DNA of 64,000 nt, taken from positions 15,624,001-15,688,000 of the forward strand of contig CM059449.1 in assembly GCA_030390025.1 (NCBI GenBank), written 5' to 3'. This stretch comes from Squalus acanthias. Lineage: Eukaryota. The notes beneath the pieces are model-generated. The model saw only the letters and a program-made list of their open reading frames with translations. It searched no databases and was not told the DNA's origin. The position numbers and the translations under genes are program-made. Shown here in pieces: positions 3,001 to 56,708 of the stretch (position 1 is the stretch's first letter; each line of letters begins with the position of its first letter).

Positions 3001-6000
3001 AGGATTTGAGGAGAATGCTTTCACCCAGAGGGTGGTGGGGATCTGGAACTCACTGCCTGAAAGGGTGGTAGAGGCAGAAACCCTCATGGCATTTAAACTG
3101 TACTTGGATATACACTAGAAGTGCTGTAACCTACAGGGCTACGGACCAAGAGCTGGAAAGTGGGATTAGGCTGGAGAGCTGTTTTTCGGCAGGCACAGTC
3201 AGTTTGGGACGAATGGCCTCCTTCTGTACCATAAACTTCTATGATTATAAGAAGCCTATATTTGTGAGGAGGAGGGATGGTCCTGGTTATGTCAAGCTTA
3301 TGGATTTTTAACGAGCTGCAAGACGACCATTCTTGACTTGATTCTAAGTTCAGCAACTCCTTACAGAGCCGTGTTGCTATTGCGAAACATAAACAGGAAA
3401 CGCTGAAAGTGCTCAGCATGTCAGTCGACATAGAATCATAGAAAGTAACAGCACTGAAGGAGGACATTTCGGCCCATCGTGTCCGCACCAGCCAATAAAG
3501 AGCTATCGAGCCTAATCCCACTTCCCAGCTTTTGGTCCGTAGCCCTGCAGATTACAGCACCCCACGTGCACATCCAAGTACATTTTAAATGTGGTTAGGG
3601 TTCCTGCCTCTACCACCCTTTCAGGCAGTCAGTTCCAGACCCACACAACCCACTGGGTGAAGAAATTTCCCCTCAAATCCCCTCTAAAATTTCCACTAAT
3701 TACTGTAAATCAGTGCTCCTTGGTTTTTGACCCCTGTGCTGAGGGAAATAGGTCCTTTCTATCCACTTTATCTGTGCCCCTCAAAATTTTATCCATCTCA
3801 ATAAGGTCTGCCCTCAGCCTCCTCTTTTCCAAGGAAAACAGACCCAGCCTATCCAGTCTTTCCTCCTGGCTAAGATTCTCTACTCCCGGCAACATCCTTG
3901 TAAATCTCCTCTGAAAACTCTCTAGTGCAATCACGTCTTTCCTGTAATGTGGTGACCAGAACTGCACGCAGTAATCTAGCTGAGGCCTAACTGTGTTTCA
4001 TACAGTTGAAGTATATCCCCCCTGCTCTTGTTTTCCATGCCATGGCTAATAAAGGCAAGCATTCCGTATGCCTTCTTAACCACCTTATCAACATCAACTG
4101 CTCCCTTCAGGGATGTGTGGGCATGCATTCCAAGGTCCCTCTGTTCCTCTATGCTTCTCAGTATCCTACTATTTAATGTGTAATCCTTTGCCTTATTAGC
4201 ACGCCCCAAGTGCATCATACTTCTCCAGGTTTTTTCTTATTCCTTCACAGGATGTGCGCATTGCTGAGAAGGCCAGCAATTATTGCCCATCACCCAATTG
4301 CCTTGCGACGGTGGCGGTGAGTTGCCTTCTTGATTAAATGGCTTGCTAGGCCATTTCAGAGGGCAGTTAAGAGCTTACCACATTTCTGTTGGTCTGGAGT
4401 CACATATAGGCCAGATTAGGTCAGGACGGCAGATTTCCTTCCCTAAAGGACATTAGTGAACCAGATGGGTTTTTCCGACAATCTGGTAGTTTCATGTAAT
4501 TAGTGTAATTCATTTAATTTAAATTCTTCAGCTGCAGTGGTGGAGATATGAACTCATATCTTCGGATCATTTGTCCAGGCCGCTGAATTACTAAACCAGT
4601 AACATAACCATTATGGTACCGTACCCCCAATTCCATTTGCCACTTTTCTGCCCAGCTGAAAAGCCATTGATATATTCCTGCATTCTACAGCTTTCATCCT
4701 CATTATCAATCAAACGGCCAATTTTTGTATCATCTGCAAACTTCTTCATCATGCCCCTTACTTGAAGTCTATATCGATTCTATCTTTTAATGTAGTATCG
4801 CTTCAAGATAGTAATTGTTTCCAAGTAATTGATTAACATTCTCTGAATCAAGGTGTATAAAATTATGAGAGGCCTCGATAGAGTGGATAGGAAGGACCTA
4901 TTTCCCTTAGCAGAAGGGTCAATAACCAGGGGCCATAGATTTAAATTAATTGTTAGAAGGATTAGGGAGGATTTGAGTAGTATGCTTTCACCCAGAGGGT
5001 GGTGGGGATCTGGAACTCACTGCCTGAAGTGGTGGTAGAGGCAGAAACCCTCATGGCATTTAAACTGTACTTGGATATACATTAGAGGTGCTGTAACCTA
5101 CAGGGCTAAGGACCAAGAGCTGGAAAGTGGGATTAGGCTGGAGAGCTGTTTTTCGCCGGCACAGTCAGGTTGGGACGAATGGACTCCTTCTCTACCATAA
5201 TCTTCTATGATTATAAGAAGCCTATATTTGTGAAGGAGGAGGGATGGTCCTGGTTATGTCAAGCTTATGGATTTTTAACCTGCTGCAAGACGACCATTCT
5301 TGACTTGATTCTAAGTTCAGCAACTCCTTACAGAGCCGTGTTGTTATTGCGAAACATAAACAGGAAATGCTGAAAGTGCTCAGCATTTCAGTCGACATAG
5401 AATCATAGAACCATAGAAAGTAACAGCACTGAAGGAGCCATTTCGGCCCATCGTGTCTACGCCGGCCAACAAAGAACTACCCAGCCTAATCCCACTTCCA
5501 GCTCTTGGTCTGTAGCCCTGTGGGTCAGAGCATGCCACGTGCACATCCAAGTACTTTTTAAATGTGGTTCGGGTTCCTGCCTCTACCACCCTTTCAGGCA
5601 ATGAGTTCCAGACCCCCACAACCCTCTGGGTGCAGAAATTTCCCCACAAATCCCCTCTAAACCTTCCACCAATTACTGTAAATCTGTGCCCCTTGGTTTT
5701 TGACCCCTCTGCGAAGGGAAATAGGTCCTTTCTATCCACTTTATCTGTGCCCCTCCTAATTTTATACTCCTCAATACGCTCTCCACTCAGCCTCCTCTGT
5801 TCCAAGGAGAAAAGATCCAGCCTATCTAATCTTTCGTCATAGCTAAGATTCTTTAATCCCAGCAACATCTTTTTAAATCTCCTCTGTACCCTCTCTAGTG
5901 CAATCACATCTTTCCTGCAATGTGGTGACCAGAACTGCACGCAATACTCTAGCTGAGGCCTAACTAGTGTTTTATACAGTTGAAGTATAACCCCCCTGCT

Positions 6001-8653
6001 CTTGTTTTCTATGCCACGGCTAATAAAGGCAAGCCTTCCGTATGCCTTCTTAACCACCTTTACTGAGGGGCCTGCTACCTTCAGGGATCTGTCAGCTTGC
6101 ATTCCAACGTCCCTCTGTTCCTCTATTCTTCTCAGTATCCTACCATTTAATGTGTACTCCTTTGTCTTATTAGCACACCCCAAGTGCATCACACTTCTCC
6201 AGATTTTTACTTATTCCTTCACAGGATGTGGGCATTGCTCGGAAGACCAACATTTGTTGCCCATTCCCCAATTGCCCTCGCGAAGGGAGCGGTGAGTTGC
6301 CTTTTACAATAAGTGGCTTGCTAGGCAATTTTAGAGGGCAGTTAAGAGCCTACCACATTTCTCTGGATCTGGAGTCACATATAGGCCAGACTAGGTAAGG
6401 ACGCAGATTTCCTTCCCTAAATAACATTAGTGAACCAGATGGGTTTTTACAACAATCTGGTAGTTTAATGTAATTTGTGTAATTCACTGAATTTAAATTC
6501 TTCAGCTGCAGTGGTGGTGATATGAACTGATATCTCCGGATCATTAGTCCAGGCCCCTAAATTACTAGACCAGTAATATAACCATTATGTTACCGTACCC
6601 CCAATTCCATTTGCCAATTTTCTGCCCAGCTGAACAGCCATTGATATATTCCTGCATTCTACAGCTTTCATCCTCATTATCAACCAAACGGCCAATTTTT
6701 GTATCATCTGCAAACTTCTTCATCATGCCCCTTACTTGAAGTCTATATCGATTCTATCTTTTAATGTAGTATCGCTGCAAGATAGTAATTGTTTCCAAGT
6801 AATTGATTAACATTCTCTTAATCAAGGTGTATAAAATTATGAGGGACCTTAGATAGAGTGGATAGGAAGGACCTATTTCCCTTAGCAGAAGGGTCAATAA
6901 CCAGGGGACATAGTTTTAAAGTAATTGGTAGAAGGATTAGGGAGGAGTTGAGGAGAATCCTTTCACCCAGAGGGTGGTGGGGATCTGCAACTCACTGCCT
7001 AAAACGGTGGTAGATGCAGAAACCCTCATGGCATTTAAACTGTACTTGGATATACACTAGAAGTGCTGTAACCTACAGGGCTACGGACCAAGAGCTGGAA
7101 AGTGGGATAAGGCTGGAAAGCTGTTTTTCGAACAGCACAGTGAGGATTGGCCGATTGCCCTCCTTCTGTGCCATAAACCACTATGATAATGAGAAGCATA
7201 TATTTGTGCGGAGGAGGGATGGTCCTGCTTGTGTCATACATATGGATTTTTAACGAGCTGCAAGACCACCATTCTTGACTTGATTCTAAATTCTGCACCT
7301 CCTTACAGAGCAGTGCTGCTATTGCGCAACATTAACAGAAAATGCTGAAAGTGCTCAGCATGTCAGTCGACATAGAATCATAGAATCATAGAAAGTAACA
7401 GCACGGAAGGAGCCATTTCGGCCCATCGTGTCTGAGCCGGCCAACAAAGAACTAACCAGCCGAATCCCACTTCCAACTCTTGGTCTGTAGCCCTGCAGGT
7501 TAGAGCATGCCACGTGCACATCCAAGTACTTTTTAAATGTGGTTAGGGTTCCTGCCTCTACCACCCTTTCAGGCAGTCAGTTCCAGACCCACACATCGCT
7601 CTGGGTGAAGAAATGTCCCCTCAAATCCCCTCTAAACCTTCCACCAATTAATGTAAATCTGAGCCCCTTGGTTTTTGACCCCTCTGCTAAGGGAAATAGG
7701 TCCTTTCTATCCACTTTATCTGTGCCCCTCATAATTTTATACACCTCAATAAGGTCTCCACTCAGCCTCCTCTGTTCCAAGGAAATCAGTCCTCGCCTAT
7801 CTAGTCATTCCTCTTAGCTAAGATTCTCTAATCCCGGCAACATCCTTGTAAATCTCCTCTGTACCCTCTCTAGTGCAATCACATCTTTCCTGTAATGTGG
7901 TGACCAGAACTGCACGCAGTACTCTAGCTGAGGCCTAACTGTGTTTCATACAGTTGAAGTATAAACCCCCTGCTCTTGTTTTCTATGCCACGGCGAATAA
8001 AGGCAAGCATTCCGTATGCCTTCTTAAACACTTTATCTACCTGGTCTGCTAACTGCAGGGATTTGTGGACATGCATTCCAAGGTCCCTCTGTTCCTCTAT
8101 GCTTCTCAGTATCCTACTATTAACTGTGTATTCCTTTGCCTTATTAGCACTCCCCAAGTGCATCATACTTCTCCAGATTTTTTCTTATTCCTTCACAGGA
8201 TGTGGGCATTGCTGGGAAGGCCAGCAATTATTGCCCATCCCCCAATTGCCCTCGCGACGGTGGCGGTGAGCTGCCTTCTTGATTAAGTGGCTTGCTAGGT
8301 CATTTCAGAGGGCAGTTAAGAGCCTACCACATTTCTGTGGGTCTGGAGTCTCATATAGGCCAGGCTAGGTAAGGAGGGCAGATTTTCTTCCCTAAAGGAC
8401 ACTGGTGAACTAGATGGGTTTTTACGACCATCTGGTAGTTTCATGTAATTTGTGTAATTCATTGAATTTAAATTCATCAGCTGCAGTGGTGGTGATATGA
8501 ACTCATATCTTCGGATCATTAGTCCAGGACCCTGAATTACTAGTCCAGTAACATAACCATTATGGTACCGTACCCCCAATTCCATTTGCCACTTTTCTGC
8601 CCAGCTGATCAGCCATTGATATATTCCTGCATTCTACAACATTCATATTCATT

Positions 8654-9397
8654 GGCCCAGAAATTGATCTCGCTCCGTTCCCGCGGGGGTAAGCCTTCCC
8701 CGCGATGTCTCACCTCGCTTATGCTTTTTCTGATCCAGCTCGCACGAAATTGATGTTCCAGACATCAGCTGTGCTGGGCTTGCGTATCCCAGCGGCGTAG
8801 TTAATTCGTGCGAGCTGTGGGATCACGTGACTCAGTTAGAGCCAATGGCAGCACACCATCTTCCATTCATAAGTCTCACAGCATAGCTGTGAGACTTATG
8901 AATCTTACACCCCCCCAAAATAACAGCTAAACCTCAATTAAATTTAAAAAAAAAACCATCATATTAATAAAATAAGTATAGTTAATTAAATTAACCATTT
9001 TAAATAAAAAATTAAATTTTTGAAAAAATTTAAAATCTTTTAAAAAGTTATAAAAATAAACTTACCTGTCTTTAAAGTCTATAAAAAAGATATACCTGTA
9101 AAAAAAAAATCAAAAAAATACTTAATTCACTACTTACCTTCTTAAAAGCGGGTCTTACTCCTCCTTTTTACATTTCCAAAATCTTCCCTACTTACCTGCG
9201 CGTCCAAAGCATGAAGTGCACAGCGTGCGCGCAGCCTGTAGCGCGCACGCGATGCACTCAAGCCCCGCCCCCTTTTCGGAAGAGCAATTGCCGGTTTTCA
9301 GCGCATGCGCAGGGTATGCAGAAAACCGGCAATTGGAGTGGGAATACGCGAGAGTATGCAGTGCGTACTCTCGCGTCCCGGGATCAATTTTCGGCCC
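8654..9397. mobile_element. Non-autonomous DNA transposon (MITE, Harbinger-like ends) inserted into one array unit
   Basis: TIRs ggcccagaaattgatc / gatcaattttcggccc (13/16 match), ATT target duplication at 8651-8653 and 9398-9400, AT-rich core. The other units show the empty site (cattatcaa). Confidence 0.85.
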
Positions 9398-10702
9398 ATT
9401 ATCAACCAAATGGCCAATTTTTGTATCATCTGGAAACTTCTTCATCATGCCCGTTAATTGAAGTCTATATCGATTCCATCTTTTAATGTAGTATAGGTGC
9501 AAGATAGTAATTCTTTCCAAGTAATTGATTAACATTCTCTTAATCAAGGTGTATAAAATTATGAGGGGCCTAGTTAGAGGGGATAGGAAGGACCTATTTC
9601 CCTTAGCAGAAGGGTCAATAACCTGGGGACATAGATTTAAATTAATTGGTAGAAGGATTAGGGAAGATTTGAGGAGAATGCTTTCACCCAGAGGGTGGTG
9701 GGGATCTGGAACTCACTGCCTGAAAGGGTGGTAGAGGCAGAAACCCTCATGGCATTTAAACTGTACTTGGATATACACTAGAAGTGCTGTAACCTACAGG
9801 GCTACGGACCAAGAGCTGGAAAGTGGGTTTAGGCTGCAGAGCTGCTTTTCGGCCTGCACAGTCAGGTTGGGACGAATGGCCTCCTTCTGTACCATAAACT
9901 TCTATGATTATAAGAAGCCTATATTTGTGAAGGAGGAGGGCTGTTCCTGGTTATGTCAAGCTTATGGATTTTTAATGAGCTGCAAGACGACCATTCTTGA
10001 CTTGATTCTAAGTTCAGCAGCTCCTGACAGAGCCGTGTTGCTATTGCGAAACATAAACAGGAAATGCTGAACGTGCTCAGCATGTCAGTCAACATAGAAT
10101 CATAGAAAGTTACAGCACGGAAGGAGCCATTTCGGCCCATCGTGTCTGCGCCGGCCAACAAAGAACTATCCAGCCTAATCCCACTTCCCAGCTCTTGGTC
10201 CGTAGCCCTGCAGGTTAGAGCATCCCACGTGCACATCCAAGTACTTTTTAAATGTGGTTAGGGTTCCTGCCTCTACCATCCTTTCAGGCAGTGAGTTCCA
10301 GACCCCCACAACCCTCTGAGTGAAGAAATTTCCCCACAAATCCCCTCTAAACCTTCCAGCAATTATTGTAAATCTGTGCCCCTTGGTTATTGACCCATCT
10401 GCTAAGGCAAATAGTTGCTTTCTATCCACTTTATCTGTGCCCCTCATAATTTTATACACCTCAATAAGGTCTCCACCAAGCCTCCTCTGTTCCAAGGAAA
10501 ACAGACCCAGCTTATCTAGTCTTTCCTCATAGCTAAGATTCTCTATTCCCGGGAACATCCTTGTAAATCTCCTCTGTACCCTCTCTAGTGGAATCACATC
10601 TTTCCTGTAATGTGGTGACCAGAACTGCACGCAATACTCTAGCTGAGGCCTAATTAGTGTTATATACAGTTGAAGTATAACCCCCCTGCTCTTGTTTTCT
10701 AT

Positions 10703-10902
10703 CACCAGGTTATAGTCCAACAGCTTTATTTGAAATCACAACCTTTCGGAGCGCTACTCCTTCGTCAGGTGACTTCACCTGACTAAGGAGCAGCGCTCCG
10801 AAAGGTTGTGATTTCAAATAAAGCTGTTAGACTATAACCTGGTGTTGTGCGACTTGTCACTTTTGTCCACACCAGTCCAACGCCCGCATCTCCTCATCAT
10901 GG
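10703..10902. mobile_element. Penelope-like element terminal remnant (inverted pseudo-LTR hairpin with hammerhead-like cores)
   Basis: 12-bp duplication cttgttttctat at 10691-10702 and 10903-10914; ~70-bp inverted arms spanning 10703-10844; CTGAC(G/T)A..GGAG..CTCC-GAAA core in each arm. Confidence 0.8.
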
Positions 10903-13900
10903 CTTGTTTTCTATGCCACGGCTAATAAAAGCAAGCATTCCATATGCCTTCATAACATCCTTATCTAACTGGCCTGCTACCTTCAGGGATCTGTCGGCAT
11001 GCATTCCAACGCCCCTCTGTTCCTCTATTCTTCTCAGTATCCTACCATTTAATGTTTATTCCTTTACCTTATTAGCACTCTCCAAGTGCCTCATACTTCT
11101 CCAGATTTTTTCTTATTCCTTTCCAGGATGTGGGCATTGCTGGGAAGGCCAGCATTTATTGCCCATTCCCCAATCGCCCTCACGAAGGTGGCGGTAAGTT
11201 GCCTTTTTGAATAAGTGGCTTGCTAGGCCATTTCAGAGCGCAGTTAAGAGCCTACCACATTTCTGTCGGTCTGTAGTCACATATAGGCCAGATTAGGTAA
11301 GGACGGCAGATTTCCTTCCCTAAAGGACATTAGTGAACCAGATGGGTTTTGACGACAATCTGGTAGTTTCATGTAATTTGTGTAATTCATTGAATTTAAA
11401 TTCTTAAGCTGCAGTGGTGGTGATATGAACTCATATCTCCGGATCATTAGTCCAGGCATCTGAATTACTAGACCAGTAACATAACCATTATGGTACCGAA
11501 CCCCCAATTCCATTTGCCACGTTTCTGCCCAGCTGATCAGTCCATTGATATATTGCTGCATTCTACAGCTTTCATCCACATTATCAACCAAACGGCCAAT
11601 TTTTGTATCATCTGCAAACTTCTTCATCATGCCCCTTACTTGTATCTCTCTCGATTATATCTTTTAATGTAGTATCGCTGCAAGATAGTAATTCTTTCCA
11701 AGTAATTGATTAACATTCTCTTAATCGAGGTGTATAAAATTATGAGGGTCCTCGATAGAGTGGATAGGAAGGACCTATTTCCCTTAGCAGAAGGGTCAAT
11801 GACCAGGGGACATAGATTTAAAGTAATTGGTAGAAGGATTAGGGAGGAATTGAGGAGAATGCTTTCACCCAGATGGTGCTGGGCGTCTGGAACTCACTGC
11901 CTGAATGTGTGGTAGAGGCAGAAACCCTCATCGCATTTAAACTGTACTTGGATATACACCAGAAGTGCTGTAACCTACAGGGCTACGGACCAAGAGCTGG
12001 AAAGTGGGATAAGGCTGGACAGCTGTGATTCGGCCGGCACAGTCAGGATGGGCCGAATGGCCTCCTTCTGTGCCATAAACCTCTATAATTATAAGAAGCC
12101 TATATTTGTGAAGGAGGAGGGATGGTCCTGGTTATGTCAAGCACATGGATTTTAACGAGCTGCAAGACAACAATTCGTGACATGATTCTCCGTTCTGCAC
12201 CTCCTTACAGAGTAGTGTTGCTGTTGTGAAACATAAACAGGAAATGCTGAAAGTGCTCAGCATTTCAGTCGAACCAGAATCATAGAATCATAGAAAGTTA
12301 CAGCACGGAAGGAGCAATATCGGCCCATCGTGTCTGCGCCGGCCAACAAAGAACTACCAGCCTAATCCCACTTCCCAGCTCTTGGTCCATAGCCCTGCAG
12401 GTTAGACATCTCACGTGCACATCCAAGTACTTTTTAAATGTGGTTCGGCTTCCTGCCTCTACCACCCTTTCAGGCAGTGAGTTCCAGACCCCCACACACC
12501 TCTGGGTGAAGAAATTTCCCCTCAGATCCCCTCTAAACCTTCCACCAATTAGTGTAAATCTGTGCGCCTTGCTTTTTGACCCCTCTGGTAAGCGAAATAG
12601 GTCCTTTGTGTCCACTTTGTCTTTCACCCTCATAATTTTATACATCTCAATTAGGTGTCCCCTCAGCCTCCTCTGTTCCAAGGAAAACAGTCCCAGCCTA
12701 TCCAGTCTTTCCTCATAGCTAGGATTCTCCAAGCCCAGCAACATCCTTGTAAATCTCCTCTGTACCCTCTCTAGTGCAATCACATATTTCCTGCAATGTG
12801 GTGACCAGAACTGCACGCAGTACTCCAGCTGAGGTCTAACTAGTGTTTTATACAGTTGAAGTATAACCCCCCTGCTCTTGTTTTCTATGCCACGGCTAAT
12901 AAAGGCAAGCATTCCGTATTCCTTCTTCACCACCTTATCTACCTTGCCTGCTACCTTCAGGGATCTGTGGTCATGCATTCCAAGGACACTCTGTTCCTCT
13001 ATGCTTCTCAGTATCCTACTATTTAATGTGTGTTCCTTTGCCTTATTAGCACTCCCCAAGTGCATCATACTTCTCCAGATTTTTTCTTATCCCTTCACAG
13101 GATGTGGGCATTGCTGGGAAGGCCAGCATTTATTGTCCGTCCCCCAATTGTCCTCGCGAAGGTGGCGGTGAGTTGCCTTTTTCAATATGTGGCTTGCTAG
13201 GCCATTTCAGAGGGCAGTTAAGAGCTTACCACATTTCTGTCGGTCTGGAGTCACATATAGGCCAGATTAGGTAAGGACGGCAGATTTTCTTCCCTAAAGG
13301 ACATTAGTGAACCAGATGGGTTGTTACGACAATCTGGTAGTTTCATGTCATTTGTAATTCATTGAATTTAAATCCTTCAGCTACAGTGGTGGTGATATGA
13401 ACTGATATCTCTGGATCATAAGTCCAGGCCTCTGAATTACTAGACCAGTAACATAATCATTATGGTACCGTACCCCCAATTCCATTTGTTACTTTTCTGC
13501 CCAGCTGACCAGTCCATTGATATATTGCTGCATTCTACAGCTTTCATCCTCATTATCAATCAAACGGCCAATTTTTGTATCATCTGCAAACTTCTTCATC
13601 ATGCCCCCTACATTGAAGTCTATATCGATTATATCTTTTAATGTAGTATCGCTGCAAGATAGTAATTCTTTCCAAGTAATTGATTAATATTCTCTTAATC
13701 AAGGTGTATAAAATTATGAGAGGCTTAGAATGAGTGGATAGGTAGGACCTATTTCCCTTAGCAGAAGGGTCAATAACCAGGGGACATAGATTTAAAGTAA
13801 TTGGTAGAAGGATTAGGGAGGATTTGAGTAGAATGCTTTCACCCAGAGTGTGATGGGGGTCTGGAACTCACTGCCTGAACGGGTGGTAGAGGCAGAAACC

Positions 13901-13904
13901 TCTC

Positions 13905-14620
13905 ACTCTCACCTCTGGAATTCAGCTCCTTTGTCCATGTTTGGACCAAGGCTGCAATGAGGTCGGGAGCTGAGTGGTCTTGGCAGAACCCAAACTGGGC
14001 ATCAGCGAGCAGGTTATTGGTGAGTAAGTGCCGCTTGATAGCACTGTCGATGACACCTTCCGTCACTTTGCTGATGATTGTGAGTAGACTGATGGGGCGG
14101 TAATTGGCCGAATTGGATTTGTCCTGCTTCTTGTGGACAGGACATACCTGGGCAGTTTTCCACATGGTCGGATAGATGCCGGTATTGTAGCTGTACTGGA
14201 ATAGCTTGTCTAGAGGCGCGGCTAGTTCTGGAGCACAAGTCTTCAGCACGATAGCCGGGATGTTGTCGGGGCCCATAGCCTTTGCTGTATCCAGTGCCCT
14301 CAGCCGTTTCTTGATATCACGTGGAGTGAATCCAATTGGCTGAAGACTGACTTCTGTGATGTTGGGGACCTTTGGAGTAGGCCGATATGGATCATCCACT
14401 CGGCACTTCTGGCTGAAGTTGGTTGCAAACGCTTCAGCCTTTTCTTAAGCACTCACGTGCTCGTACTCCCTCCCTAACAGGACTGTGGGAGTACCTTCAC
14501 CACACGGACTGCAGCGGTTCAAGAAGGCGGCTCACTACCATCCTCTCAAGGGCAATTAGGAATGGGCAATAAATGCTGGCCTTGTCAGCGACGCCCGCAT
14601 CCCATGAATATTTTAAAAAC
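13905..14620. mobile_element. HER1-type LINE fragment with inversion: RT piece on (-) 13905-14460 joined to the 3' end on (+) 14462-14620
   Basis: ORF 13839-14399 carries RT motifs (KAMGPDNIP, NYRPISLL, QFGF). It is followed on the opposite strand by the 3' tail gggcaataaatgctggcc...catcccatgaa. Confidence 0.75.
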
Positions 14621-16080: not shown

Positions 16081-16132
16081 ATGAACTTTAGCCATGTTAT
16101 TGGAACAATCTGGGTAACGGCTATGATCGCCG
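16081..16132 (+). CDS. NCR3-like: Gene A exon 1, leader MNFSHVIGTIWVTAMIA
   Basis: Kozak context gacaccATGA, hydrophobic peptide, phase-1 donor G|gtaagg. Similar to the gene B leader. Confidence 0.75.
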
Positions 16133-17859
16133 GTAAGGAACTATTTTATGTTATGTCGGTTTCCAATTGCAAGATGAGAGTACAAACCGGAAAGAAAGCA
16201 ACCTCCTCTTGTAGCGCATTCTTATATTGTTTCATTTGTTAAATTCAAGTACTCTTACATGTTATGATCCGCACGCGGATAAATAAATAGGGCGTTAAGC
16301 TTTAAAAAGAAATCAATGGTACCGAAAGGACAGCTTTCCAAACTTGAAATGGTTGACGTGACTGAGAAATGTGCCGATTTCAAATACATACACGCGCAAT
16401 GATCACCGAGCCATTATTGTTTAGCAACCCTCGCCGACAATCAAAGCTGGCGCCCATCTTAAGTGAATGGCCCAAAATTGCAAGGAATTAAATCAACATT
16501 TTGAAATAACACAGATCCGAATAATTTCTTAATATCATTGAGGGGCCTAGATAGAGTGGATAGGAAGTATCTATGTCCCTTAGCAGAAGGGGTCAATAAC
16601 CAGGGGGCATAGATTTAAACTAATTGGTACAAGGTTTAGAAGGAAGTTGAGGAGAATTTTCTTCACCCAGAGGGCGGTGGGGGTCTGGAACTCAATGCCT
16701 GAAAGGGTGGTAGAGGCAAAAAACCTCATCGCATTTAAAAAGTACTTGGATATGCACTTGGAGTGTTGTAAACTACAAGGCTACAGACCAAATGCTGGAA
16801 AGTGGGATTAGGCTGGATTGCTCTTTGTCGGCCGGCGCGGACAAGATGGGATGAATGGATTCCTCCTGTGACGTAAATTTCTATGATTCTATGATTTGAT
16901 TTATTCCCAATCCTTTTATTTCGGTGTTCTGAAGTGATAATAAGATGAAAAATAGCCGATATATTAAGAATGTAACGAAGCAATTTTAAAAAACGCCATA
17001 AGTGTGTTAGAATATAAAGCCATGATAGTGTCAGAGAACTAAACTAAGCTTCTAAATGCACGGGTCAACTATTGTTAAAATCCTACTTTCAGCTTTCCTA
17101 TCGATGACACAAAATATATCTGGACTGGAAAGGGTGCATTGAGGAGCAACAAAACCCTTCCGAAGTGTAAAGAGATGATACGTGAGGAGAGATAAGCGAA
17201 GCATAAGTGTTTCAGTCTTAAAAAAAGGCAGTTAAGTGCCGGGGGCGGCGGGGGGTGGGTGTGGGGGGGGGGGGGGGGGGAACTTAATCATAAATGCTAT
17301 AGATAAAGTGCATCCCGATTATTCCGTCGAAGCCATGAAAGTAGAATCAGATCCATCAATGGGTAATAGTGAAAAGGGACATTTTAAGCTAAAAGCAAGA
17401 ACAACGTGTTTGTCTCAAAACTTGTAGGAATTTATACAGCGCGCAATAGAGGTAAATATTGGGGCTACTCAAAATGCAATTAAATACCGTGGCGGGAGTT
17501 CGTGTATCTAATGGTTGATTTTGATGGGTTGAGGGACATTTTCTCGTCACAGGCTTTTTAAGTGCCTTTAGAGCCATGTTTTATTGCACCAACTAACAAC
17601 ACGGGCTATATACAGTCAATGTCACTGTATTAATATCCGTGTTTTTATAAAAATATTTGAACAATGTATCCTTACAAATTGCCATTCGGCAGAGTGGCGG
17701 CGCGCACGCCTCGCTCAACTGTAACAATACTGATAATTTTTAAAGGTTTAAGGACTCTTTTAAACGCTGCGAGCATTCATGCCTAATATAGGAAGCAGTA
17801 CTTTCCAGGGCAAAATATCTCACCCCACTGTGTATTGTATTGACTTCACCCATCTACAG

Positions 17860-18201
17860 CAGTTACTGTTGGAAAAATCACCGTAATTCAGAGCCCGCAA
17901 TCACTCACCAAAACCGCGGGACAGACAGCGGGCCTGCTCTGTAGATATGAGGGTCCCAAAGGAATCGGCAGCTGCACGTGGCACCGAGGCACCAAACAGG
18001 GAAATGAAGTTTCCAACAATACAGCGGAATACAGAGGCAGGGTGTTCGGGGCAAGTGAAGAGGAATTCAGCCAGAGGGGAGACGCGTCCATTAGAATAAT
18101 CCAGCTGAAACCGGAAGATACCGGGCTCTATTTTTGCAAACTGGAGCTCTTGGGATTCGCTGCAGCAGACGGACCCGGGACAGCAGTGACCGTGGAACGG
18201 G
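17860..18201 (+). CDS. NCR3-like: Gene A exon 2, NKp30-like VJ-type Ig V domain (AVTVGKITVIQSP...LLC...IGSCTW...EYRGRV...DTGLYFC...GPGTAVTVER)
   Basis: 342-nt phase 1-1 exon (tacag| ... |gtaagt). Canonical V-set Cys, Trp, DxxxYxC and a J-like GxGT motif. Resembles recalled NKp30 motifs (IGSVTW, EV.N.T.E.RGR, YVC.VEVLG...G.GT). Confidence 0.9.
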
Positions 18202-18387
18202 GTAAGTTTGTATTTTTTTTGAAAAGTAGACGGGTTCTTTTAAGTGCGAGAGGTGTGCCCTGCCAGGTTACCACCCAGGATGGTAACGGCGAACTTCCAG
18301 CCCGGAGGACGTCTTAGCCCCCTTGCGTTACTCGTTGCCTTGGACCAGAAAGCGATAGGGAGATTTTTTAGACCTGTTATTCCATAG

Positions 18388-18539
18388 GTGCCGAAACGGA
18401 ATTTAAGATAATGAGCAACGAAGAGCCTACAAGCTTCTTCAGCGACGTCCGGATTCTATGGTGTGTCCGTGCTGCAGTGATAGCTTTACTGGTCGTTTTT
18501 GGAATCATCGTCGCTATCTATCTGCTTCCGTCAGAAGAG
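18388..18539 (+). CDS. NCR3-like: Gene A exon 3, stalk plus TM containing Arg (ILWCVRAAVIALLVVFGIIVAIYLL)
   Basis: Acceptor tccatag| is in frame (phase 1) with the V exon; donor GAG|gtactg is phase 0. The Arg sits near the TM N-terminus as in NKp30 (LLLRAG). Confidence 0.8.
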
Positions 18540-18643
18540 GTACTGGTAGCGAATGTCAATATATGTATTATTTACTGTTTGGGACGCATGGAAAAGTATT
18601 TTATAATTGTTTAGCACAACGATTACACTCTGGTTCCATAGAA

Positions 18644-19025
18644 TGAGGGAACGATAGCAGAGTGGTAATGTTACTGGACTGGTAATCCAGAAACCTGGAC
18701 TAATAATCCGAGGACAAGCGTTTAAATCCCACCACGGCAGCTGGGAAATTTAAATTCAATTAAATAAATCTGGGATAAAAAGCGAGCATCAGTAATGGTG
18801 AGCATGTAACTACCGGATTGTCGTCAAAACCCATCTGGTTCACTAATGTCCTTTAGGGAAGGAAATCTGCCATCCTTACCTGGTCTGGCCGATATGTGAC
18901 TCCAGACCCACAGCAATGTGGTTGACTCTTAACTGCCCTCTGAAATGGACTGGCAAGCCACTCAAGGGCAATTAGGGATGGGCAATAAATGCTGGCCTTG
19001 TCCACATCCCGTGAATGAATAAAGA
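18644..19025 (+). mobile_element. HE1-type tRNA-derived SINE
   Basis: tRNA-like head (gcagagtggtaatg... tttaaatcccacc), core acccatctggttcactaatgtcctttagggaaggaaatctgcc, and a HER1-type 3' tail. Other copies: one per array unit, 33050-33330(-), 54700-54835(-). Confidence 0.8.
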
Positions 19026-19349
19026 AAACGTTTATCGTTTAATTAATGTGAGATGCAGGAAGATAGCGGTGTGAGAAGGATTTCTGCACTTGGGTTCCAG
19101 CCAAGCAGAACCGCGCAACAATGTCTGGATCCTTGAAGTCTGGGTCTGTAACAGTCTTAGCTCAAGACTGAGCTGCGAGCACGTTTGATAAAGGCTCGCT
19201 CCCTCTCTCCGAACGTTAAGTGTTTCTAAAGCCGGGAGAGGAGAACACCTGCTCTCAAGACACATAAATTGAGATGATATGGGTTTGCAAAGTGTTCAGG
19301 ATGTCCAAGGAAACACAGGGGAAGATAATCCTTCCAAAGTGTCCGTTAC

Positions 19350-20549: not shown

Positions 20550-21016
20550 AAAAAAGTCTTGCTTTTCTATAGCGCATTTCACGACCACCGGACATCCCAA
20601 AGCGCTTTGCAGCCAATGAAGAACTTATGAAGTGGAGTCACTGTTGTAATGTAAGAAACGCAGCTGCCAATTTCTGCACAGCAAGCTCCCACAAACAGCA
20701 ATGTGATAATAATCAGATAATCTGTTTTTGTTATGTTGGTTGAGGGATAAATATTGGCCAGGGCACCGGGGATAACTCCCTTGCTCTTCTTCGAGATAGT
20801 GCTATGGGATCTTTTACAGCCAACTGAGAGGGCAGACGGGGCCTCGGTTTAATGTCTCATCCGAAAGACGGCACCTCCGACAGTGCAGCACCCCCTCAGT
20901 ACGACACTGGAATGTCAGCCTAGATTTTTGTGCTCAAGTCTCTGGAGTGGGATTTTAACCCACAATCTTCTGACTCAGAGGCGACAGTCCTACCCACTGA
21001 GCTACGGCTGACGCCG
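20550..21016 (-). mobile_element. Deu-domain SINE (SacSINE1-like) with L2-type tail
   Basis: tRNA-like head (gtagctcagtgggtag), core gtgctgcactgtcggaggtgccgtctttcggatgagac. Further copies at 35870-36275 and 43815-44262, both (-). Confidence 0.7.
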
Positions 21017-21620
21017 ATATGATAGCAATTGATGTTTGATTTTTACTCTGCAGCCCAAGATTGTCTTGGACATTCGAGGATATATTTTTCTTAAATCGTG
21101 TTGTACAGAAATACATCATCAAAGGTCTCGAACAAATGTTTAAAATAAGGTCTGTAGCGTAGCACAAACATTATGTACAGCCCATAATTTATGTAATCTT
21201 TAGCCCGTTTCTGTCGGAAACTCTACCAATTCACTGTTGTATTAATTACGGTACAGTTAAGGTACTGTTCCCCATGTAAGGGTATGATGCTTCATTAAGC
21301 GCTGGTCTTTTTCCCATTGCCCTATTTATCTTCACACTTTCTATTTTCCTTGTGATGAGATTTGTCACTGCGTTTCATTACTTTGTTTTCCAATACTTGT
21401 TTTTCACTGAGCATCGTGGACTGCTGTAAATGTTGCTGTTCAGCATTATACCGGAAACCAGAACTGGTGTTTTTGCCCCTGCAAAATATCTATATGCGGG
21501 AAATAAGTGTACGGTGCCCCTGCCCCATCGTCACCAACACCCAAATCCATCAGTTGACAAGTAATCTACAAATGGTAATAACTTGGTCTGAAATTCATTT
21601 TTTTGTTACTTTTGTGACAG

Positions 21621-21668
21621 AACGAACCTACTTTTTATAAAAAGCTAAAACAAGGAGAACATTTTCAG
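21621..21668 (+). CDS. NCR3-like: Gene A cytoplasmic exon NEPTFYKKLKQGEHFQ (first half of the ITAM-like motif)
   Basis: ttttgtgacag| acceptor, CAG|gtaaat donor, 48 nt. Only the phase-0 frame is open, which matches the TM exon. Confidence 0.6.
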
Positions 21669-21730
21669 GTAAATATGTAAAGAGCTGGTATCCTCGTCTC
21701 CGACAGCCTAATGTCTTGCTTTTTATCAAG

Positions 21731-21770
21731 TATCCACGCATAAACCCATCAATAAATGCAATGTTTTCGG
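21731..21770 (+). CDS. NCR3-like: Gene A cytoplasmic exon YPRINPSINAMFS (second half of the ITAM-like motif)
   Basis: ctttttatcaag| acceptor, G|gtaaag donor, phase 0 to 1. The preceding intron is only 62 nt. Confidence 0.45.
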
Positions 21771-22075
21771 GTAAAGCAGTGGCACCTATATGTTATGTTT
21801 CAATCATTCTAATCTGGCACAATTTGCATAAAATAAATAATGGTTTCCGTCATTTTATTCCAATTTGGGGTCATAATAGTGGCAGTAAAGGTATCTGGTA
21901 CTATTGCTGAAAGGCTAAACCATGGTAATACTCGAACTGGAAATCTGAATAAGGTGGTTACAAACGCACCAGATTTTTACACTTTGATTGTGATTTACAA
22001 TAAATGTGATTGCCATTGAAACTATTGAAATTAACTTTTCAAATTTTATTTTGATGAATATGTTTCCTCATCTAG

Positions 22076-22180
22076 GAGGCAATGGAAGTACTGAACATTC
22101 AACCCATGTGGGACCTTTTTCTCCTCCCCCAAATATTGCATCTAACGCCGACTTCAGACTGCCCACTTCCGATTATGATG
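22076..22180 (+). CDS. NCR3-like: Gene A cytoplasmic exon GGNGSTEHSTHVGPFSPPPNIASNADFRLPTSDYD
   Basis: tttcctcatctag| acceptor, G|gtgatt donor, 105 nt, phase 1-1. FSPPP-NIA resembles gene C tail modules. Confidence 0.5.
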
Positions 22181-23364
22181 GTGATTTTCCATTTCCTAAC
22201 GGCCTTCTCACAGTCCATCTTTCGACTCAATGCATTCAGGAGAAATAAGCTTCCCCATAGGCTGCACGCAAACTTTTATTTTATTCCTTCTGGGGAAGGT
22301 GGGCGTCGCTAGTTCATCCCTAGTTGCACTTGAGAAGGAGGAGGTGGGCCTCCTCCTTGAGTCACTGCAGTCCGTGGGGTGAAGGTACTCCCAAAATGCT
22401 GTTAGGTAGAGAGTTCCTGGATTTTTGACCAAGTGACAATGAAGGAAAGACGATATATGATGATACAATTCGGGATGGTGTGTGACTTGGAGGGGAAACT
22501 TGGAGTTGATGGTGTACCCATGCACCTCGGCTGTTCCTACGAACTACATTTCCATCGGAGTTTAATTGTTTGATGTCGGACATTTTCAGATTGGCCTGAG
22601 TCTGTGTTTACTTAGCAATAATAGTATTGGATGGCTTTAAGGAGATGCTTTCCTACCTTAGTAGCAGAATAATATACCGTGTCTTACATGGCATAACGGT
22701 TGTGTCCTTGTAAAATAAACACCATCCAACTCACAGTGATCAGTACGATGAACAATTAGCCTCCCCATCTTGGTCCGTAGGAAAAACAATGTTAAGCTAT
22801 GTTATGTTCCAGTACGTGCTGCCTTGTTCTACTCTATGTAGCGCGCTTGAGTAAGATTAAATTGTACATAACTACTTATTTCTAAGCCCAATTAGGAGTT
22901 AAACTCATTTCGTCAAGTAAAATAAAACGAATCAAGCATTTTGCTCATTAACTGGTGGTCCAAAAAACACTTTATCACCCATTACAAGATAAAACATTGG
23001 CAACAGTTCGTATAGAAGTTTCAGGAGTGCTGTTAAGCCGAAAATTCTGGAGTGAAATTAAAATAAACATGAAGAGGAAGAGACACTGGTTATTGATCAG
23101 AAGAATTTGGGATTGTGTTTGGAATAGCACATTTTCCTCTGCTCACTTACTTCAAGTCTCTCGGAATTTAGAACAGGTTTTAAAATCTTCAATGTTTCCT
23201 TCATAAAGTGAAGAGCTTGACTTGCCAAAAAATCCTATTCCTGATACTAAAGTGATTTCCATTCTCCACCAATCTGGAACTATTGCTTACTGAATAACCG
23301 TTCGGAGATTTCCCAAATTATGTTTTACTAATTCGGCATGTGCCTTCACTTCTTTTGACTTCAG

Positions 23365-49078: not shown

Positions 49079-49417
49079 ACAATGGGTTGATGAGTGGAAT
49101 CAGAGTGTTCCAATCCCCAGATGCCATCAATGTAATAGAAGGAGGATCGGTACAGCTGAACTGCACTTTTGAGGCGAATAGTACTGTCGGACGAGTTGTT
49201 TGGAGGCGGGCCTCACAAAACATGGAAGTGTCGGTTCGGAATCCTTTCTATCAGAGCCGGGTAACGAAGCCAGTGTCGAAATTATTTGCAGAAAAAATGG
49301 CTTTCATTGAAATGATCAATTTACTGACAATGAACGCGGATTTATATAACTGCGAGGTGGAAATTCCGGCGCTTGGGAAAGCAGGCGGGACAGGAACACA
49401 ACTTATAATAACTGACA
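49079..49417 (+). CDS. NCR3-like: Gene C V exon, divergent NKp30-like VJ-type Ig domain
   Basis: tactctag| ... A|gtaagt, 339 nt phase 1-1. VFQSP...EGGSVQLNCTF...VGRVVW...YQSRV...DLYNCEVEI..LG...GTGTQL. Leader exon not securely located. Confidence 0.85.
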
Positions 49418-55390: not shown

Positions 55391-55425
55391 CAATATTGCG
55401 CCTTGCAGTAACATTATTTTTAATG
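55391..55425 (+). CDS. NCR3-like: Gene C micro-exon, 35 nt, NIAPCSNIIFN
   Basis: Pyrimidine tract ending caaag|, G|gtgagt donor, phase 2 to 1. Confidence 0.6.
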
Positions 55426-55647
55426 GTGAGTATTAGTTATATGCATTTAACTGTTCGATTTTCTAAATAGTCCTTGAAGCAATTTTTTTTAATGAGCAAT
55501 TATTGTTAGTAAAGGACTTCAGTAGTTTCGCTGATTTTTATTGCTGGATGGACATAAGAGGTGCATACAATTTTAAACTCGTTTCACAGTCTCAAATGTC
55601 TTGTTTGCATCAAAGGAAACCTTAATTTTCGGCTTTTGTTCCCACAG

Positions 55648-55669
55648 AGTTAGCTCCACAAGCATTAAG
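55648..55669 (+). CDS. NCR3-like: Gene C micro-exon, 22 nt, ELAPQAL(R)
   Basis: ttttgttcccacag|, AG|gttggt, phase 1 to 2. Confidence 0.65.
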
Positions 55670-55756
55670 GTTGGTTGGTGGTTATGAGGGTGACGCATTT
55701 TTTTAATTACCTGGATTTTTGTTTCAGCTATGTGATTGTATCTTTTCTCTTGCTAG

Positions 55757-55806
55757 ATCCTGGATGGACATCGCTGGTTCCGCCTATGATGAAATTAATC
55801 CAGCTG
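55757..55806 (+). CDS. NCR3-like: Gene C micro-exon, 50 nt, SWMDIAGSAYDEINPA (ITIM-like SAYDEI)
   Basis: ttttctcttgctag|, G|gtgagt, phase 2 to 1. Confidence 0.7.
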
Positions 55807-56549
55807 GTGAGTGACGCACCTGCAGCGCAGTTAACCTGCTCCTCAATGGACCGGTTGCTTCAGAGCCTACATGCACTGCCCGGTGTACTCCTGAGGCACC
55901 AGTGCCAGAGAGATCCCATGGTTGGAGCCATGAGATGTGCCGAACTAACTGATCCTACTCTGGCTGGTGATTGGGTGCTACCGTCGCCGGGATTTTAATC
56001 GGGAGCCTGGTTGGGTGCAGGGCAGAAAGACTGGCTGGGAGCTGTGAGGTGGGAGGTATCAGGTGCGGGCCGGAGGTGAGGTTGGGTTGTCGGGGGCCGG
56101 AGGAGGATTGGGGAGGAGGGAGGGAAGCATCGGGGCCGGAGCGTCGAGGAGGTGAGGGAGAGAAGATCGGGGCAGGAGCATTGGGTGGGGGGTGGTGTGG
56201 ACAGGGAAAGATTATCGGAGCCGGAGCATCAGGGGAGAAGGGAGAGAACATCGGGGCTGCAGCCTGGGGGCAAGGGGGGATCGGGAGAAAACATCTGGGG
56301 GTGGGGGTGGGGGGGAGAGGTGGGATCTGCTTGCACCATCTTTTCAGGTCGTGCTTTCCCTATCATAACAACTCACTGCATAAAAAATTCTCCTGAACTC
56401 CCCTCTGGTACTTTTGCCAATTATCTTGAATCGGTATCCTCTGGTTACCGACCCTCCCACCAGTGGAAACGGTTTCTTGTAGTCGAACTGTTTTTAAAAA
56501 GATTGCATTAACGTTACAAAGCTTTCATGGTGAACTTTTACTTTTGTAG

Positions 56550-56571
56550 ATGTTCCTCCACCAATGGGAAG
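56550..56571 (+). CDS. NCR3-like: Gene C micro-exon, 22 nt, DVPPPMG(R)
   Basis: cttttgtag|, AG|gtcggt, phase 1 to 2. Confidence 0.65.
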
Positions 56572-56673
56572 GTCGGTAAATCTCAGAGTTAACGTTTCCT
56601 ACATCTTTTATGCTAATTGCTCTGTAACTCTGCAGTAACACTCATTTTCTCTTATTTGTTTGTCGTCCCGAAG

Positions 56674-56708
56674 GAATGAGCCGTTCTGTGATGAAACTAA
56701 CTTGGATG
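56674..56708 (+). CDS. NCR3-like: Gene C micro-exon, 35 nt, NEPFCDETNLD
   Basis: gtcccgaag|, G|gtgagc, phase 2 to 1. Confidence 0.65.

What the first reader, a model, noticed from the sequence alone, without database searches (positions are those of the whole stretch)
21621..21770. Gene A may carry its own ITAM (YKKL-x7-YPRI) in addition to a TM arginine
Seen: joining the 48-nt and 40-nt exons gives NEPTFYKKLKQGEHFQYPRI, which fits YxxL-x(6-8)-YxxI with an upstream acidic residue. The 40-nt exon also supplies the phase change (0 to 1) needed by the next exon. Established: CD3gamma/delta ITAMs look similar (NDQ.YQPL.D....QYSHL), whereas mammalian NKp30 has no ITAM of its own. Inference: a ligand-binding VJ receptor with built-in ITAM signalling plus adaptor coupling. 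Caveat: it requires a 62-nt intron, which is unusually short for a vertebrate.
Basis: partly seen in the sequence, partly recalled or inferred. Interest (0 to 1): 0.85.

Follow-up and report, generated by a model that had tools for sequence, protein, structure and literature searches.

The report
Candidate ITAM in shark NKp30-like receptor
A shark immune-receptor gene related to NKp30 has two tiny candidate exons that would give it its own activation motif if spliced together, but I found no RNA or cross-species evidence, and a short-tailed reading of the same DNA fits about as well.

Summary
A 48-nt piece (21621-21668) and a 40-nt piece (21731-21770) both have AG/GT borders. The first ends in YKKL plus 7 residues, the second begins with YPRI, and the junction is in phase 0. 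The gene is an intact NKp30-like receptor with an arginine at the outer edge of its membrane span, and it is paired with an inhibitory twin.

In shuffles, such a split motif appears about once per 128 kb at loose splice thresholds and 0 of 100 times at the observed quality. Chance alone is therefore unlikely (about 0.01 for this gene).

It is still unproven, and it is not a classical ITAM:
- The exon border lies before the second tyrosine, not inside the first YxxL.
- Y-3 is proline.
- 0 of 28 relatives with a charged membrane span have an ITAM.
- No contig of the four runs laid covers the tail.

If the 62-nt intron stays unspliced, a stop follows after 3 codons, and three AATAAA lie within 330 nt. 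A short-tail form is an equal rival.

First readers of this scan noted other "own-ITAM" NKp30-like genes elsewhere in this genome; those notes are also unchecked.

My odds: ITAM-like tail made in some transcripts 0.4; short tail only 0.33.

The parts
16081..16132 (+). Gene A leader exon, coding part (MNFSHVIGTIWVTAMIA plus 1 base; donor G|GTAAGG; phase 1)
   Evidence: The leader resembles that of Chiloscyllium punctatum GCC38509.1 (P0009).
17860..18201 (+). Gene A V exon: germline-joined VJ Ig domain, NKp30-like
   Evidence: Translation. Pfam V-set E 4.7e-12. Best PDB hits are 4 NCR3 entries. 93.3% nt identical to gene B's V exon, with identity confined to 17845-18203.
18388..18539 (+). Gene A stalk and transmembrane exon. 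Contains ...SDVRILWCVR followed by the hydrophobic core AAVIALLVVFGIIVAIYLL, then PSEE. Ends in phase 0; donor GAG|GTACTG is weak (5/9).
21621..21668 (+). 48-nt candidate cytoplasmic exon (NEPTFYKKLKQGEHFQ), carrying the first YxxL. Open only in phase 0.
   Evidence: pyrimidine tract 0.75; donor CAG|GTAAAT 8/9. Donors this good occur 36 times in 127,982 positions.
21669..21730 (+). 62-nt candidate intron: GT...AG, CTAAT at 21708-12, A16 C13 G12 T21. If it is not spliced, the frame reads VNM and then stops at TAA 21678-80.
   Evidence: In humans, introns under 66 nt are termed ultra-short, below the 65-nt threshold of the short-intron population (PMC4463651, abstract start seen in the listing).
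21731..21770 (+). 40-nt candidate exon (YPRINPSINAMFS plus 1 base), carrying the second YxxI. Contains an AATAAA at 21751-56.
   Evidence: pyrimidine tract 0.70; donor 6/9.
21751..22004 (+). Cluster of three AATAAA (21751, 21832, 21999): a possible polyadenylation region for a short-tail transcript
   Evidence: Three in 407 nt; 1.5% of same-size windows of this window have 3 or more; 35 of 5000 shuffles of the segment do.
22076..22248 (+). Candidate last coding exon, phase 1: G then GNGSTEHSTHVGPFSPPPNIASNADFRLPTSDYDGDFPFPNGLLTVHLSTQCIQEK, stop 22246-48. Also open in phase 0 up to a stop at 22310-12.
   Evidence: No Pfam hit. No protein of 31-98 aa shares words with it. A dispersed repeat starts at 22312.

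Best explanation
Gene A is the activating-type partner of a paired NKp30-like (NCR3-family) receptor pair in a shark. Its exons are leader 16081, V 17860, TM 18388 and tail from 21621. It has an NKp30-like VJ domain and an arginine at the outer edge of its membrane span. By analogy with mammalian NKp30, that arginine should couple it to an acidic ITAM adaptor (inferred).

Its tail begins with a real 48-nt exon encoding YKKL. I think it slightly more likely than not having it that, in at least part of the transcripts, the 62-nt intron is removed. The 40-nt exon then adds YPRI exactly 7 residues later, and a 57-residue disordered end follows from 22076.

This would be an ITAM-like motif assembled independently of the classical adaptor ITAM: the exon border is in a different place and there is no D/E/N at Y-3. 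The same DNA also offers a short-tail end. Left unspliced, the frame stops after 3 codons and three AATAAA follow. The gene may therefore choose between a short adaptor-only tail and a long tyrosine tail.

Shown: the sequence, the splice signals, the rarity by chance, and the family of the ectodomain.
Inferred: the splicing, phosphorylation, Syk/ZAP70 binding and adaptor coupling.

The confidence of 0.4 is for the splicing. I put a true tandem-SH2 ITAM function at about 0.2.
For: - Motif and splice sites are present exactly as described.
- The 48-nt piece is open only in the phase left by the TM exon (read).
- The donor at 21669 scores 8/9; such donors are 36 in 127,982 positions.
- Split-ITAM constructs: 0.99 per 128 kb in shuffles at loose thresholds, 0 of 100 at observed quality, and only this one in the real window on both strands. 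That is about 0.01 for 4 kb, one strand and one phase.
- If the exon start and YKKL are taken as real, an in-frame donor plus a fitting YxxL/I exon downstream would arise by chance in roughly 0.004-0.008 (my arithmetic).
- The first pyrimidine-rich acceptor after the 40-nt piece opens a 56-codon frame in the phase that piece delivers.
- Micro-exon tails with short introns are used in this family. Gene B has 22-nt and 35-nt exons 110 nt apart. Gene C's ladder matches the annotated Heterodontus francisci protein P0016.
- Gene A is otherwise intact. An A-like V-exon contig ending on the exon border is present in run X2.
- One shark relative, Scyliorhinus canicula P0013, has YxxL-x6-YxxL in its tail.
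Against: - There is no transcript evidence. All four runs have zero depth over 21034-21957 and 22112-22265; only X3 shows 1.06 in the bin 21958-22111. They also have zero depth on the TM exon.
- None of the runs is on record as RNA, and they are small, 129-161 million letters read.
- No orthologue or paralogue of the tail was found. The tail exons have no second copy in the window and no match among 150 family representatives.
- 0 of 28 family proteins with R/K in the membrane span have an ITAM, and 25 of them have no Yxx[LIV] in the tail at all.
- The exon border is not at the classical ITAM position. Y-3 is Pro and Y+1/Y+2 are Lys-Lys.
- A 62-nt intron is below the 65-nt threshold of human short introns (abstract start).
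- A stop lies 3 codons into the unspliced intron, and three AATAAA lie in the next 330 nt.
- The last exon is also open in phase 0.
- Similarity of the three tail pieces to the H. francisci ladder tail is not significant: p 0.31, 0.07 and 0.46.
Confidence: 0.4

Rival explanations
1. Short tail only. 21621 is the start of the terminal exon and the GT at 21669 is not used. The protein ends ...YKKLKQGEHFQ-VNM (stop 21678-80), and the message is polyadenylated after one of the AATAAA at 21751, 21832 or 21999. Gene A is then an ordinary adaptor-dependent activating receptor with a tail of about 24 residues and one lone YxxL. YPRI is non-coding.
For: - A stop comes 3 codons after the donor.
- Three AATAAA lie in 407 nt, seen in only 1.5% of same-size windows and in 35 of 5000 shuffles.
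- Short tails without tyrosine motifs are the rule for charged-TM relatives: 25 of 28 have no Yxx[LIV], and none has an ITAM.
- Mammalian NCR tails carry no signalling motif, with the exception of a putative ITIM in NKp44 (PMC6514059 passages).
- The intron would be only 62 nt.
Against: - It leaves four things to chance: an 8/9 donor on a codon boundary, an acceptor with branch site 62 nt on, a YxxI at once behind it at ITAM spacing, and open frames beyond. My estimate for this is roughly 0.004-0.008.
- The first AATAAA lies 15 nt upstream of a second donor.
- The region is 66% A+T, so AATAAA is not rare there.
Confidence: 0.33
2. The exons are spliced as proposed, but the two motifs are not a tandem-SH2 ITAM. 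YKKL and YPRI would act as YxxPhi sorting or endocytosis signals, or as separate single-SH2 docking sites. Activation would run only through the TM arginine and an adaptor. This is a sub-case of the best explanation's splicing.
For: - Basic residues follow both tyrosines (KK, and R at Y+2), and there is no D/E/N at Y-3 (consensus quoted in PMC4536121).
- The CEACAM paper leaves open whether ITAM-like motifs of paired receptors are internalisation or activation signals, and it defines an endocytic ITAM-like motif as Yxx(L/M/V/I/F) (PMC2832619 passages).
- That Arg at Y+2 is favoured by the AP-2 mu2 subunit is my recollection and comes from no call.
Against: The spacing of exactly 7 residues is the ITAM spacing. 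CEACAM3-type ITAM-like motifs that lack the acidic residue do signal (PMC2832619 passages).
Confidence: 0.2
3. Neither piece is an exon. Gene A's message ends elsewhere, for example by read-through of the weak 18540 donor, which adds 26 codons before a stop. The 21621-22248 pieces would then be chance open frames or decayed relics of an older tail.
For: - The TM-exon donor is weak (5/9), and read-through gives a stop after 26 codons (ORF 18411-18614).
- No RNA covers the tail.
- No homologue of any tail piece was found.
- At loose thresholds, one split-ITAM per 128 kb is what shuffles give.
Against: The motif sits on the right strand, in the right phase, in the only repeat-free stretch downstream of the TM exon (21012-22311). 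Its splice-site quality was never reached in 100 shuffles.
Confidence: 0.12

Closest known systems
Mammalian NKp30 (NCR3)
   Same: - A single VJ-type V domain. The four best solved-structure matches are NCR3, E 1.4e-13 to 2.9e-13.
- Arg at the outer part of the membrane span followed by Ala-Ala, like the L[LF]LRA[AG] of seven relatives.
- Alternative cytoplasmic tails by alternative processing are known for human NKp30a-c (PMC6514059 passage).
   Different: The mammalian tail has no signalling motif of its own (PMC6514059). Gene A has at least one YxxL and possibly two. V-domain similarity is distant.
Shark NCR3-family genes (nurse shark NCR3 P0005; Chiloscyllium punctatum GCC38509.1 = P0009; Heterodontus and Scyliorhinus models)
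   Same: - V domain identity is 55-68%.
- P0009 shares the MNFSH... leader of gene A.
- The family contains both ITIM-tailed and charged-TM members.
   Different: No listed member has gene A's tail. P0009 is annotated only up to the end of the V domain. The paper on eight shark NCR3 subtypes (Kinlein et al. 2021, PMC8273117) is not held, so it may already describe such tails.
Classical ITAM of the signalling subunits (CD3, TCR zeta, FcR gamma, DAP12, CD79)
   Same: YxxL, 7 residues, YxxI, split over two exons by a phase-0 intron.
   Different: - The border lies before the second tyrosine instead of inside the first YxxL.
- There is no D/E/N at Y-3.
- The motif sits on a ligand-binding chain with a basic, not acidic, membrane residue (PMC4536121).
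ITAM-like tails of ligand-binding IgV receptors: CEACAM3-type paired receptors; teleost NILT and NITR
   Same: - The receptor has its own ITAM or ITAM-like motif, encoded by small cytoplasmic exons.
- In eutherian CEACAMs the acidic residue is missing too.
[quoted passage not shown] This is exactly what genes A and B show.
- NILTs carry either an ITAM or ITIMs, and their cytoplasmic exons are 35-62 nt (PMC3022915).
   Different: In those receptors the YxxL is split by the intron, and none is reported there with a charged membrane residue as well. They belong to different Ig families.

Membership tests
NKp30 / NCR3 family | Non-rearranging VJ-type V-set Ig domain closest to NKp30 | tested here: met
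   Pfam V-set E 4.7e-12. Top 4 PDB sequences are all NCR3. Relatives are named NCR3 in nurse shark and Chiloscyllium. A GPGT J-like motif is present.
NKp30 / NCR3 family | Basic residue in the membrane span for adaptor pairing | tested here: met
   The sequence is ...ILWCV-R-AAVIALLVVFGIIVAIYLL. Caveat: the Arg sits at the edge of the 19-residue core, so how deep it lies in the membrane is not certain.
NKp30 / NCR3 family | Association with CD3 zeta / FcR gamma; binding of a B7H6-like ligand; MHC linkage | not testable with these tools
Classical ITAM | YxxL/I, 6-8 residues (classically 7), YxxL/I in the cytoplasmic tail | tested here: inconclusive
   Met only in the spliced model. The junction was not seen in any run.
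Classical ITAM | D/E/N at Y-3 of the first tyrosine | tested here: not met
   Y-3 is Pro, with E at Y-4 and N at Y-5. The consensus is quoted from PMC4536121.
Classical ITAM | Two exons with the border splitting the first YxxL module (phase 0) | tested here: not met
   The border is phase 0 but lies between Q and the second Y. The rule comes from PMC4536121 and the PMC2832619 Fig. 5 legend.
Classical ITAM | Dual phosphorylation and recruitment of Syk/ZAP70 | not testable with these tools
   Needs biochemistry.
Paired activating/inhibitory IgV receptors with own ITAM-like motif (CEACAM3 type) | An ITIM-bearing twin whose ligand-binding exon is kept alike by gene conversion | tested here: met
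   Gene B lies on the minus strand. Its V exon is 93.3% identical over 359 nt, with identity ending within 15 nt of the exon. Its TM is uncharged. Its tail carries FQYATL.
YxxPhi sorting signal | Tyr, two residues, then a bulky hydrophobic residue in a cytosolic tail | tested here: met
   YKKL and YPRI. Function was not tested.

The most novel reading that the evidence does not exclude
One shark NKp30-family gene switches between two forms: an adaptor-dependent short-tail form and a self-signalling form. The self-signalling form would carry an ITAM assembled independently from two tyrosine micro-exons, not inherited from the CD3/FcR-gamma cassette. The switch would be a choice between splicing a 62-nt intron and stopping or polyadenylating inside it. 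The protein would then carry both a TM arginine and its own ITAM.
Probability: 0.15. Interest if true: 0.7.

Novelty: new variant of a known kind. Interest (0 to 1): 0.4.

Why it matters
If the long tail is made and signals, it would show two things. First, at the base of jawed vertebrates, the split between ligand-binding chains and ITAM adaptors was not strict in the NKp30 family. Second, an ITAM can be built anew from small tyrosine exons. It would also give a compact natural case of splice-versus-polyadenylation control of receptor signalling.

If the short tail is the only product, gene A is an ordinary activating partner of an inhibitory twin. That is still useful for annotating the shark NCR3 cluster, but it is not surprising.

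Tried and rejected
RNA evidence
- The one run search gave 6 small runs; three held 8-10% of the words.
- The one read-laying run (4601 letters; X1-X4; 90% likeness) showed contigs only on the V exon and on dispersed repeats.
- X1's 211-nt piece has 6 differences. That equals the 6 A/B differences within 17859-18069, so it is gene B's transcript.
- X2's piece (2 differences) is A-like.
- Nothing lay on the TM exon or the tail, so there is no verdict either way.

Orthologues
- The V-exon search of 1.84 billion representatives gave 325 proteins at E up to 0.001, of which 150 were listed. None has a tail like gene A's (best blastp E 0.84 for the TM exon, 5.8, 2.9 and 4.1 for the tail pieces).
- Three word-index searches gave 3 proteins, none, and none.

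Homology of the tail to the family's micro-exon ladder
- I thought I saw NE..Y..[IL].Q and Y..INP shared with H. francisci P0016. Local alignments are not significant (p 0.31, 0.07, 0.46), and post-hoc motif counts are near expectation.
- One targeted DNA alignment scored above 300 of 300 shuffles (21693-21729 against gene C's intron at about 55578-55613). A whole-window blastn does not recover it. I do not rely on it.
- P0016's C-terminal match at 48503-48441 lies in what looks like a dispersed repeat (my reading). This is a dead end.

Literature
- My recollection that ITAM exons split just before the second tyrosine was wrong and was corrected.
- Kinlein et al. 2021 and Flajnik et al. 2012 are not held.
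- Searches found no paper in the library that describes the tails of shark NKp30-like genes. That is no proof that none is in print.
- Supplements were not asked for.

Full report
WHAT IS THERE

The stretch 21621-21770 reads as the finding says.
- After AG (21619-20) come 48 nt encoding NEPTFYKKLKQGEHFQ, then the donor CAG|GTAAAT.
- 62 nt later, after a CTAAT (21708-12) and a T-rich tract, AG (21729-30) is followed by 40 nt encoding YPRINPSINAMFS plus one base, then the donor CGG|GTAAAG.
- In my simple scoring, the pyrimidine fractions are 0.75 and 0.70, and the donors match a recalled MAG|GTRAGT consensus at 8/9 and 6/9 positions.
- The first tyrosine motif (YKKL) is followed by 7 residues to the exon end. 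The second motif (YPRI) opens the next piece, and the junction is in phase 0.
Every search and test was done exon by exon.

THE GENE

The gene model on the + strand is:
- leader 16081-16132;
- V exon 17860-18201;
- stalk/TM exon 18388-18539;
- then 3.1 kb that is mostly dispersed repeats;
- then a repeat-free stretch 21012-22311 that holds the candidate tail.

The V exon is a V-set domain (Pfam E 4.7e-12). Its four best matches among solved structures are all human NKp30/NCR3 (E 1.4e-13 to 2.9e-13), ahead of SIRP and antibody V domains.

Among 1.84 billion representatives, 325 proteins match at E up to 0.001. The nearest are shark proteins from Scyliorhinus canicula, Heterodontus francisci, Ginglymostoma cirratum ('Natural cytotoxicity triggering receptor 3') and Chiloscyllium punctatum. 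The leader resembles that of C. punctatum GCC38509.1 (P0009), which is annotated only as far as the V domain.

The TM exon reads ...SDVRILWCV-R-AAVIALLVVFGIIVAIYLL-PSEE. The Arg lies at the outer edge of a 19-residue hydrophobic core. Seven relatives carry L[LF]LRA[AG] in the same position. The exon ends in phase 0, and the 48-nt piece is open only in phase 0.

A PAIRED RECEPTOR

Gene B lies on the minus strand (leader about 42934, V 40610-40256, TM 38689-38558).
- Its V exon is 93.3% identical to gene A's over 359 nt, with 24 differences. The identity stops within 15 nt of the exon on either side.
- Its membrane span is uncharged.
- Its tail uses a 22-nt and a 35-nt micro-exon and a last exon with FQYATL.

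This is the pattern described for CEACAM paired receptors, where the highest similarity covers the ligand-binding exon and barely reaches the introns (PMC2832619 passage). Gene A is therefore the activating-type twin of an inhibitory gene.

IS THE MOTIF MORE THAN CHANCE?

I enumerated all AG...GT pieces of 12-150 nt and asked for two things: one piece ending in Yxx[LI] plus k residues on a codon boundary, and a later piece (60-2000 nt on) starting with m residues plus Yxx[LI], with k+m = 6-8.
- At loose thresholds (pyrimidine at least 0.65, donor at least 6/9), the real window has exactly one such locus on both strands, and it is this one.
- Block shuffles give 0.99 loci per 128 kb, and 65 of 100 shuffles have at least one. 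An earlier run gave 18 of 40.
- At the quality actually observed, 0 of 100 shuffles have one. Those thresholds were set after seeing the data.
- Scaled to 4 kb downstream of one TM exon, on one strand and in one entering phase, the loose figure is about 0.01.
- Donors of 8/9 or better are rare: 36 in 127,982 positions.

Chance alone is therefore a poor explanation for this gene. Across a whole genome of such genes, however, a few chance cases are to be expected.

WHAT SPEAKS AGAINST A WORKING ITAM

1. No transcript evidence.
   - The runs found are small, and none is on record as RNA.
   - Their contigs stop exactly on the V-exon borders and leave the unique intron parts uncovered, which looks like RNA. 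They cover only the V exon and repeats.
   - Depth is zero in all four runs over 21034-21957 and 22112-22265 and on the TM exon; only X3 shows 1.06 in the bin 21958-22111.
   - One contig is gene B's. Its 6 differences equal the 6 A/B differences in that span. One contig in X2 is A-like.

2. No conservation test was possible.
   - The tail pieces have no second copy in the window.
   - They have no match among the 150 listed family proteins.
   - They have no word-sharing protein of 31-98 aa.

3. Base rate. 101 family proteins are 120-420 aa long, and 63 of them have a predicted span. Of those, 28 have R/K in the span. None of the 28 has an ITAM, and 25 have no Yxx[LIV] in the tail.

4. It is not the classical ITAM.
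   - The consensus is D/E/NxxYxxL/I-(x)7-YxxL/I.
[quoted passage not shown] 5 legend).
   - Here Y-3 is Pro, and the border lies before the second tyrosine.
   - I had recalled the opposite about the border. The papers corrected me.

5. The intron is 62 nt. In humans the short-intron population has a threshold at 65 nt, and shorter introns are a special class (PMC4463651, start of the abstract as shown in the listing). Gene B's and gene C's micro-exon introns are about 90-220 nt.

THE SHORT-TAIL RIVAL

If the GT at 21669 is not used, the frame reads three more codons and stops at 21678-80. AATAAA then occurs at 21751, 21832 and 21999. That is three in 407 nt, which only 1.5% of same-size windows here reach, and only 35 of 5000 shuffles of the segment itself.

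This gives a tail of about 24 residues with a single YKKL, which is what charged-TM relatives usually look like.

Against it: the strong donor, the acceptor 62 nt on, the YxxI at ITAM spacing and the open frames beyond would all have to be accidents. My arithmetic from the site frequencies puts that at roughly 0.004-0.008.

The two sets of signals need not exclude each other. A choice between splicing and stopping or polyadenylating would give two isoforms. Human NKp30 also has alternative tails (PMC6514059 passage).

THE LAST EXON

22076 is the first pyrimidine-rich acceptor after the 40-nt piece.
- In phase 1 it gives 56 codons of a Pro/Ser/Asp-rich, tail-like sequence, with the stop at 22246-48.
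- In phase 0 it is also open, for 78 codons of a hydrophobic sequence.
- Phase 2 has stops.

The exon has no Pfam hit.

FAMILY RESEMBLANCE OF THE TAIL

This was tried and not established.
- The H. francisci protein P0016 and gene C of this window (V 49099-49410; micro-exons at 55391, 55648, about 55757-55806, 56674 and 58286) have a ladder of tyrosine/cysteine micro-exons.
- By eye, gene A's pieces recall them, but the alignments are not significant (p 0.31, 0.07, 0.46).
- One shark relative (S. canicula P0013) does carry YxxL-x6-YxxL in its tail. It is one of 7 proteins, out of 150, that match a looser pattern with a 6-12-residue spacer. ITAM-like spacing in this family is therefore not unheard of.

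VERDICT

The ectodomain and the TM arginine fit an activating NKp30-like receptor paired with an inhibitory twin. The 'own ITAM' remains a genomic prediction with a serious rival, and if real it is a non-classical, independently assembled motif.

My odds:
- spliced ITAM-like tail in at least some transcripts: 0.4 (true tandem-SH2 ITAM function about 0.2);
- short tail only: 0.33;
- neither piece an exon: 0.12;
- the remainder is left unassigned.

Receptors with their own ITAM or ITAM-like motif are known: teleost NILT and NITR (PMC3022915) and CEACAM3-type. The novelty would be a variant, namely such a motif combined with a TM arginine in the NKp30 family.

The key paper on shark NCR3 subtypes (Kinlein et al. 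2021) could not be read and may already cover this. Other first-reader notes of this scan claim own-ITAM NKp30-like genes elsewhere in this genome. I could not test them, and they are not independent support.

Noticed in passing
window 17845-18203 (+) versus 40621-40263 (-): Genes A and B share a V exon that is 93.3% identical (24 differences in 359 nt). The identity ends within about 15 nt of the exon, and the introns, TM and tails are unrelated. This looks like exon-limited gene conversion between an activating and an inhibitory twin lying tail to tail.
   Followed up: partly
window 34500-34396 (-): Gene B's last exon reads REGDEKFQYATLNVQDSNQTERRVKREGVL and then TAG (34398-34396). Relatives P0004 and P0001 continue at this point with ...VLYATVK. 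Gene B therefore seems to have a stop at the position where its relatives have the tyrosine of their second motif.
   Followed up: no
window 38246-38225 and 38114-38080 (-): Gene B's 22-nt and 35-nt micro-exons (phases 1 to 2 to 1) encode ...PDPLYSEIHET, with a 110-nt intron between them.
   Followed up: partly
window 49099-49410 and 55391-58307 (+): A third, divergent NKp30-like gene (gene C; V domain 30% identical to gene A's) has a ladder of micro-exons. Two of them match the tail of the annotated Heterodontus francisci protein XP_067865368.1 (P0016): NIAPCSN... with E 0.001, and ...YDEINPA with E 0.53. I did not find its TM exon.
   Followed up: partly
window 48503-48441 (-): The last 21 residues of H. 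francisci P0016 match this stretch (E 0.012). To my eye it lies in a dispersed repeat. Either that model's C-terminus comes from an exonised repeat or the match is chance.
   Followed up: no
window 17859-18200, runs X1-X3: Contigs of three small 2017 runs end exactly on the V-exon borders and continue with letters unlike the introns. They look like spliced mRNA. One is gene B's and one is gene A-like. X3 shows a mixed pattern of A and B letters, which could be a third paralogue or an allele.
   Followed up: partly
window 16538-16896 and at least 14 more places in 1-14000: A dispersed repeat of about 355 nt (75-84% identical copies) fills much of the first 14 kb. Other repeat families flank gene A's tail (18644-19028, 20550-21011, 22312-22527). 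A run of more than 20 G lies at about 17262-17282.
   Followed up: no
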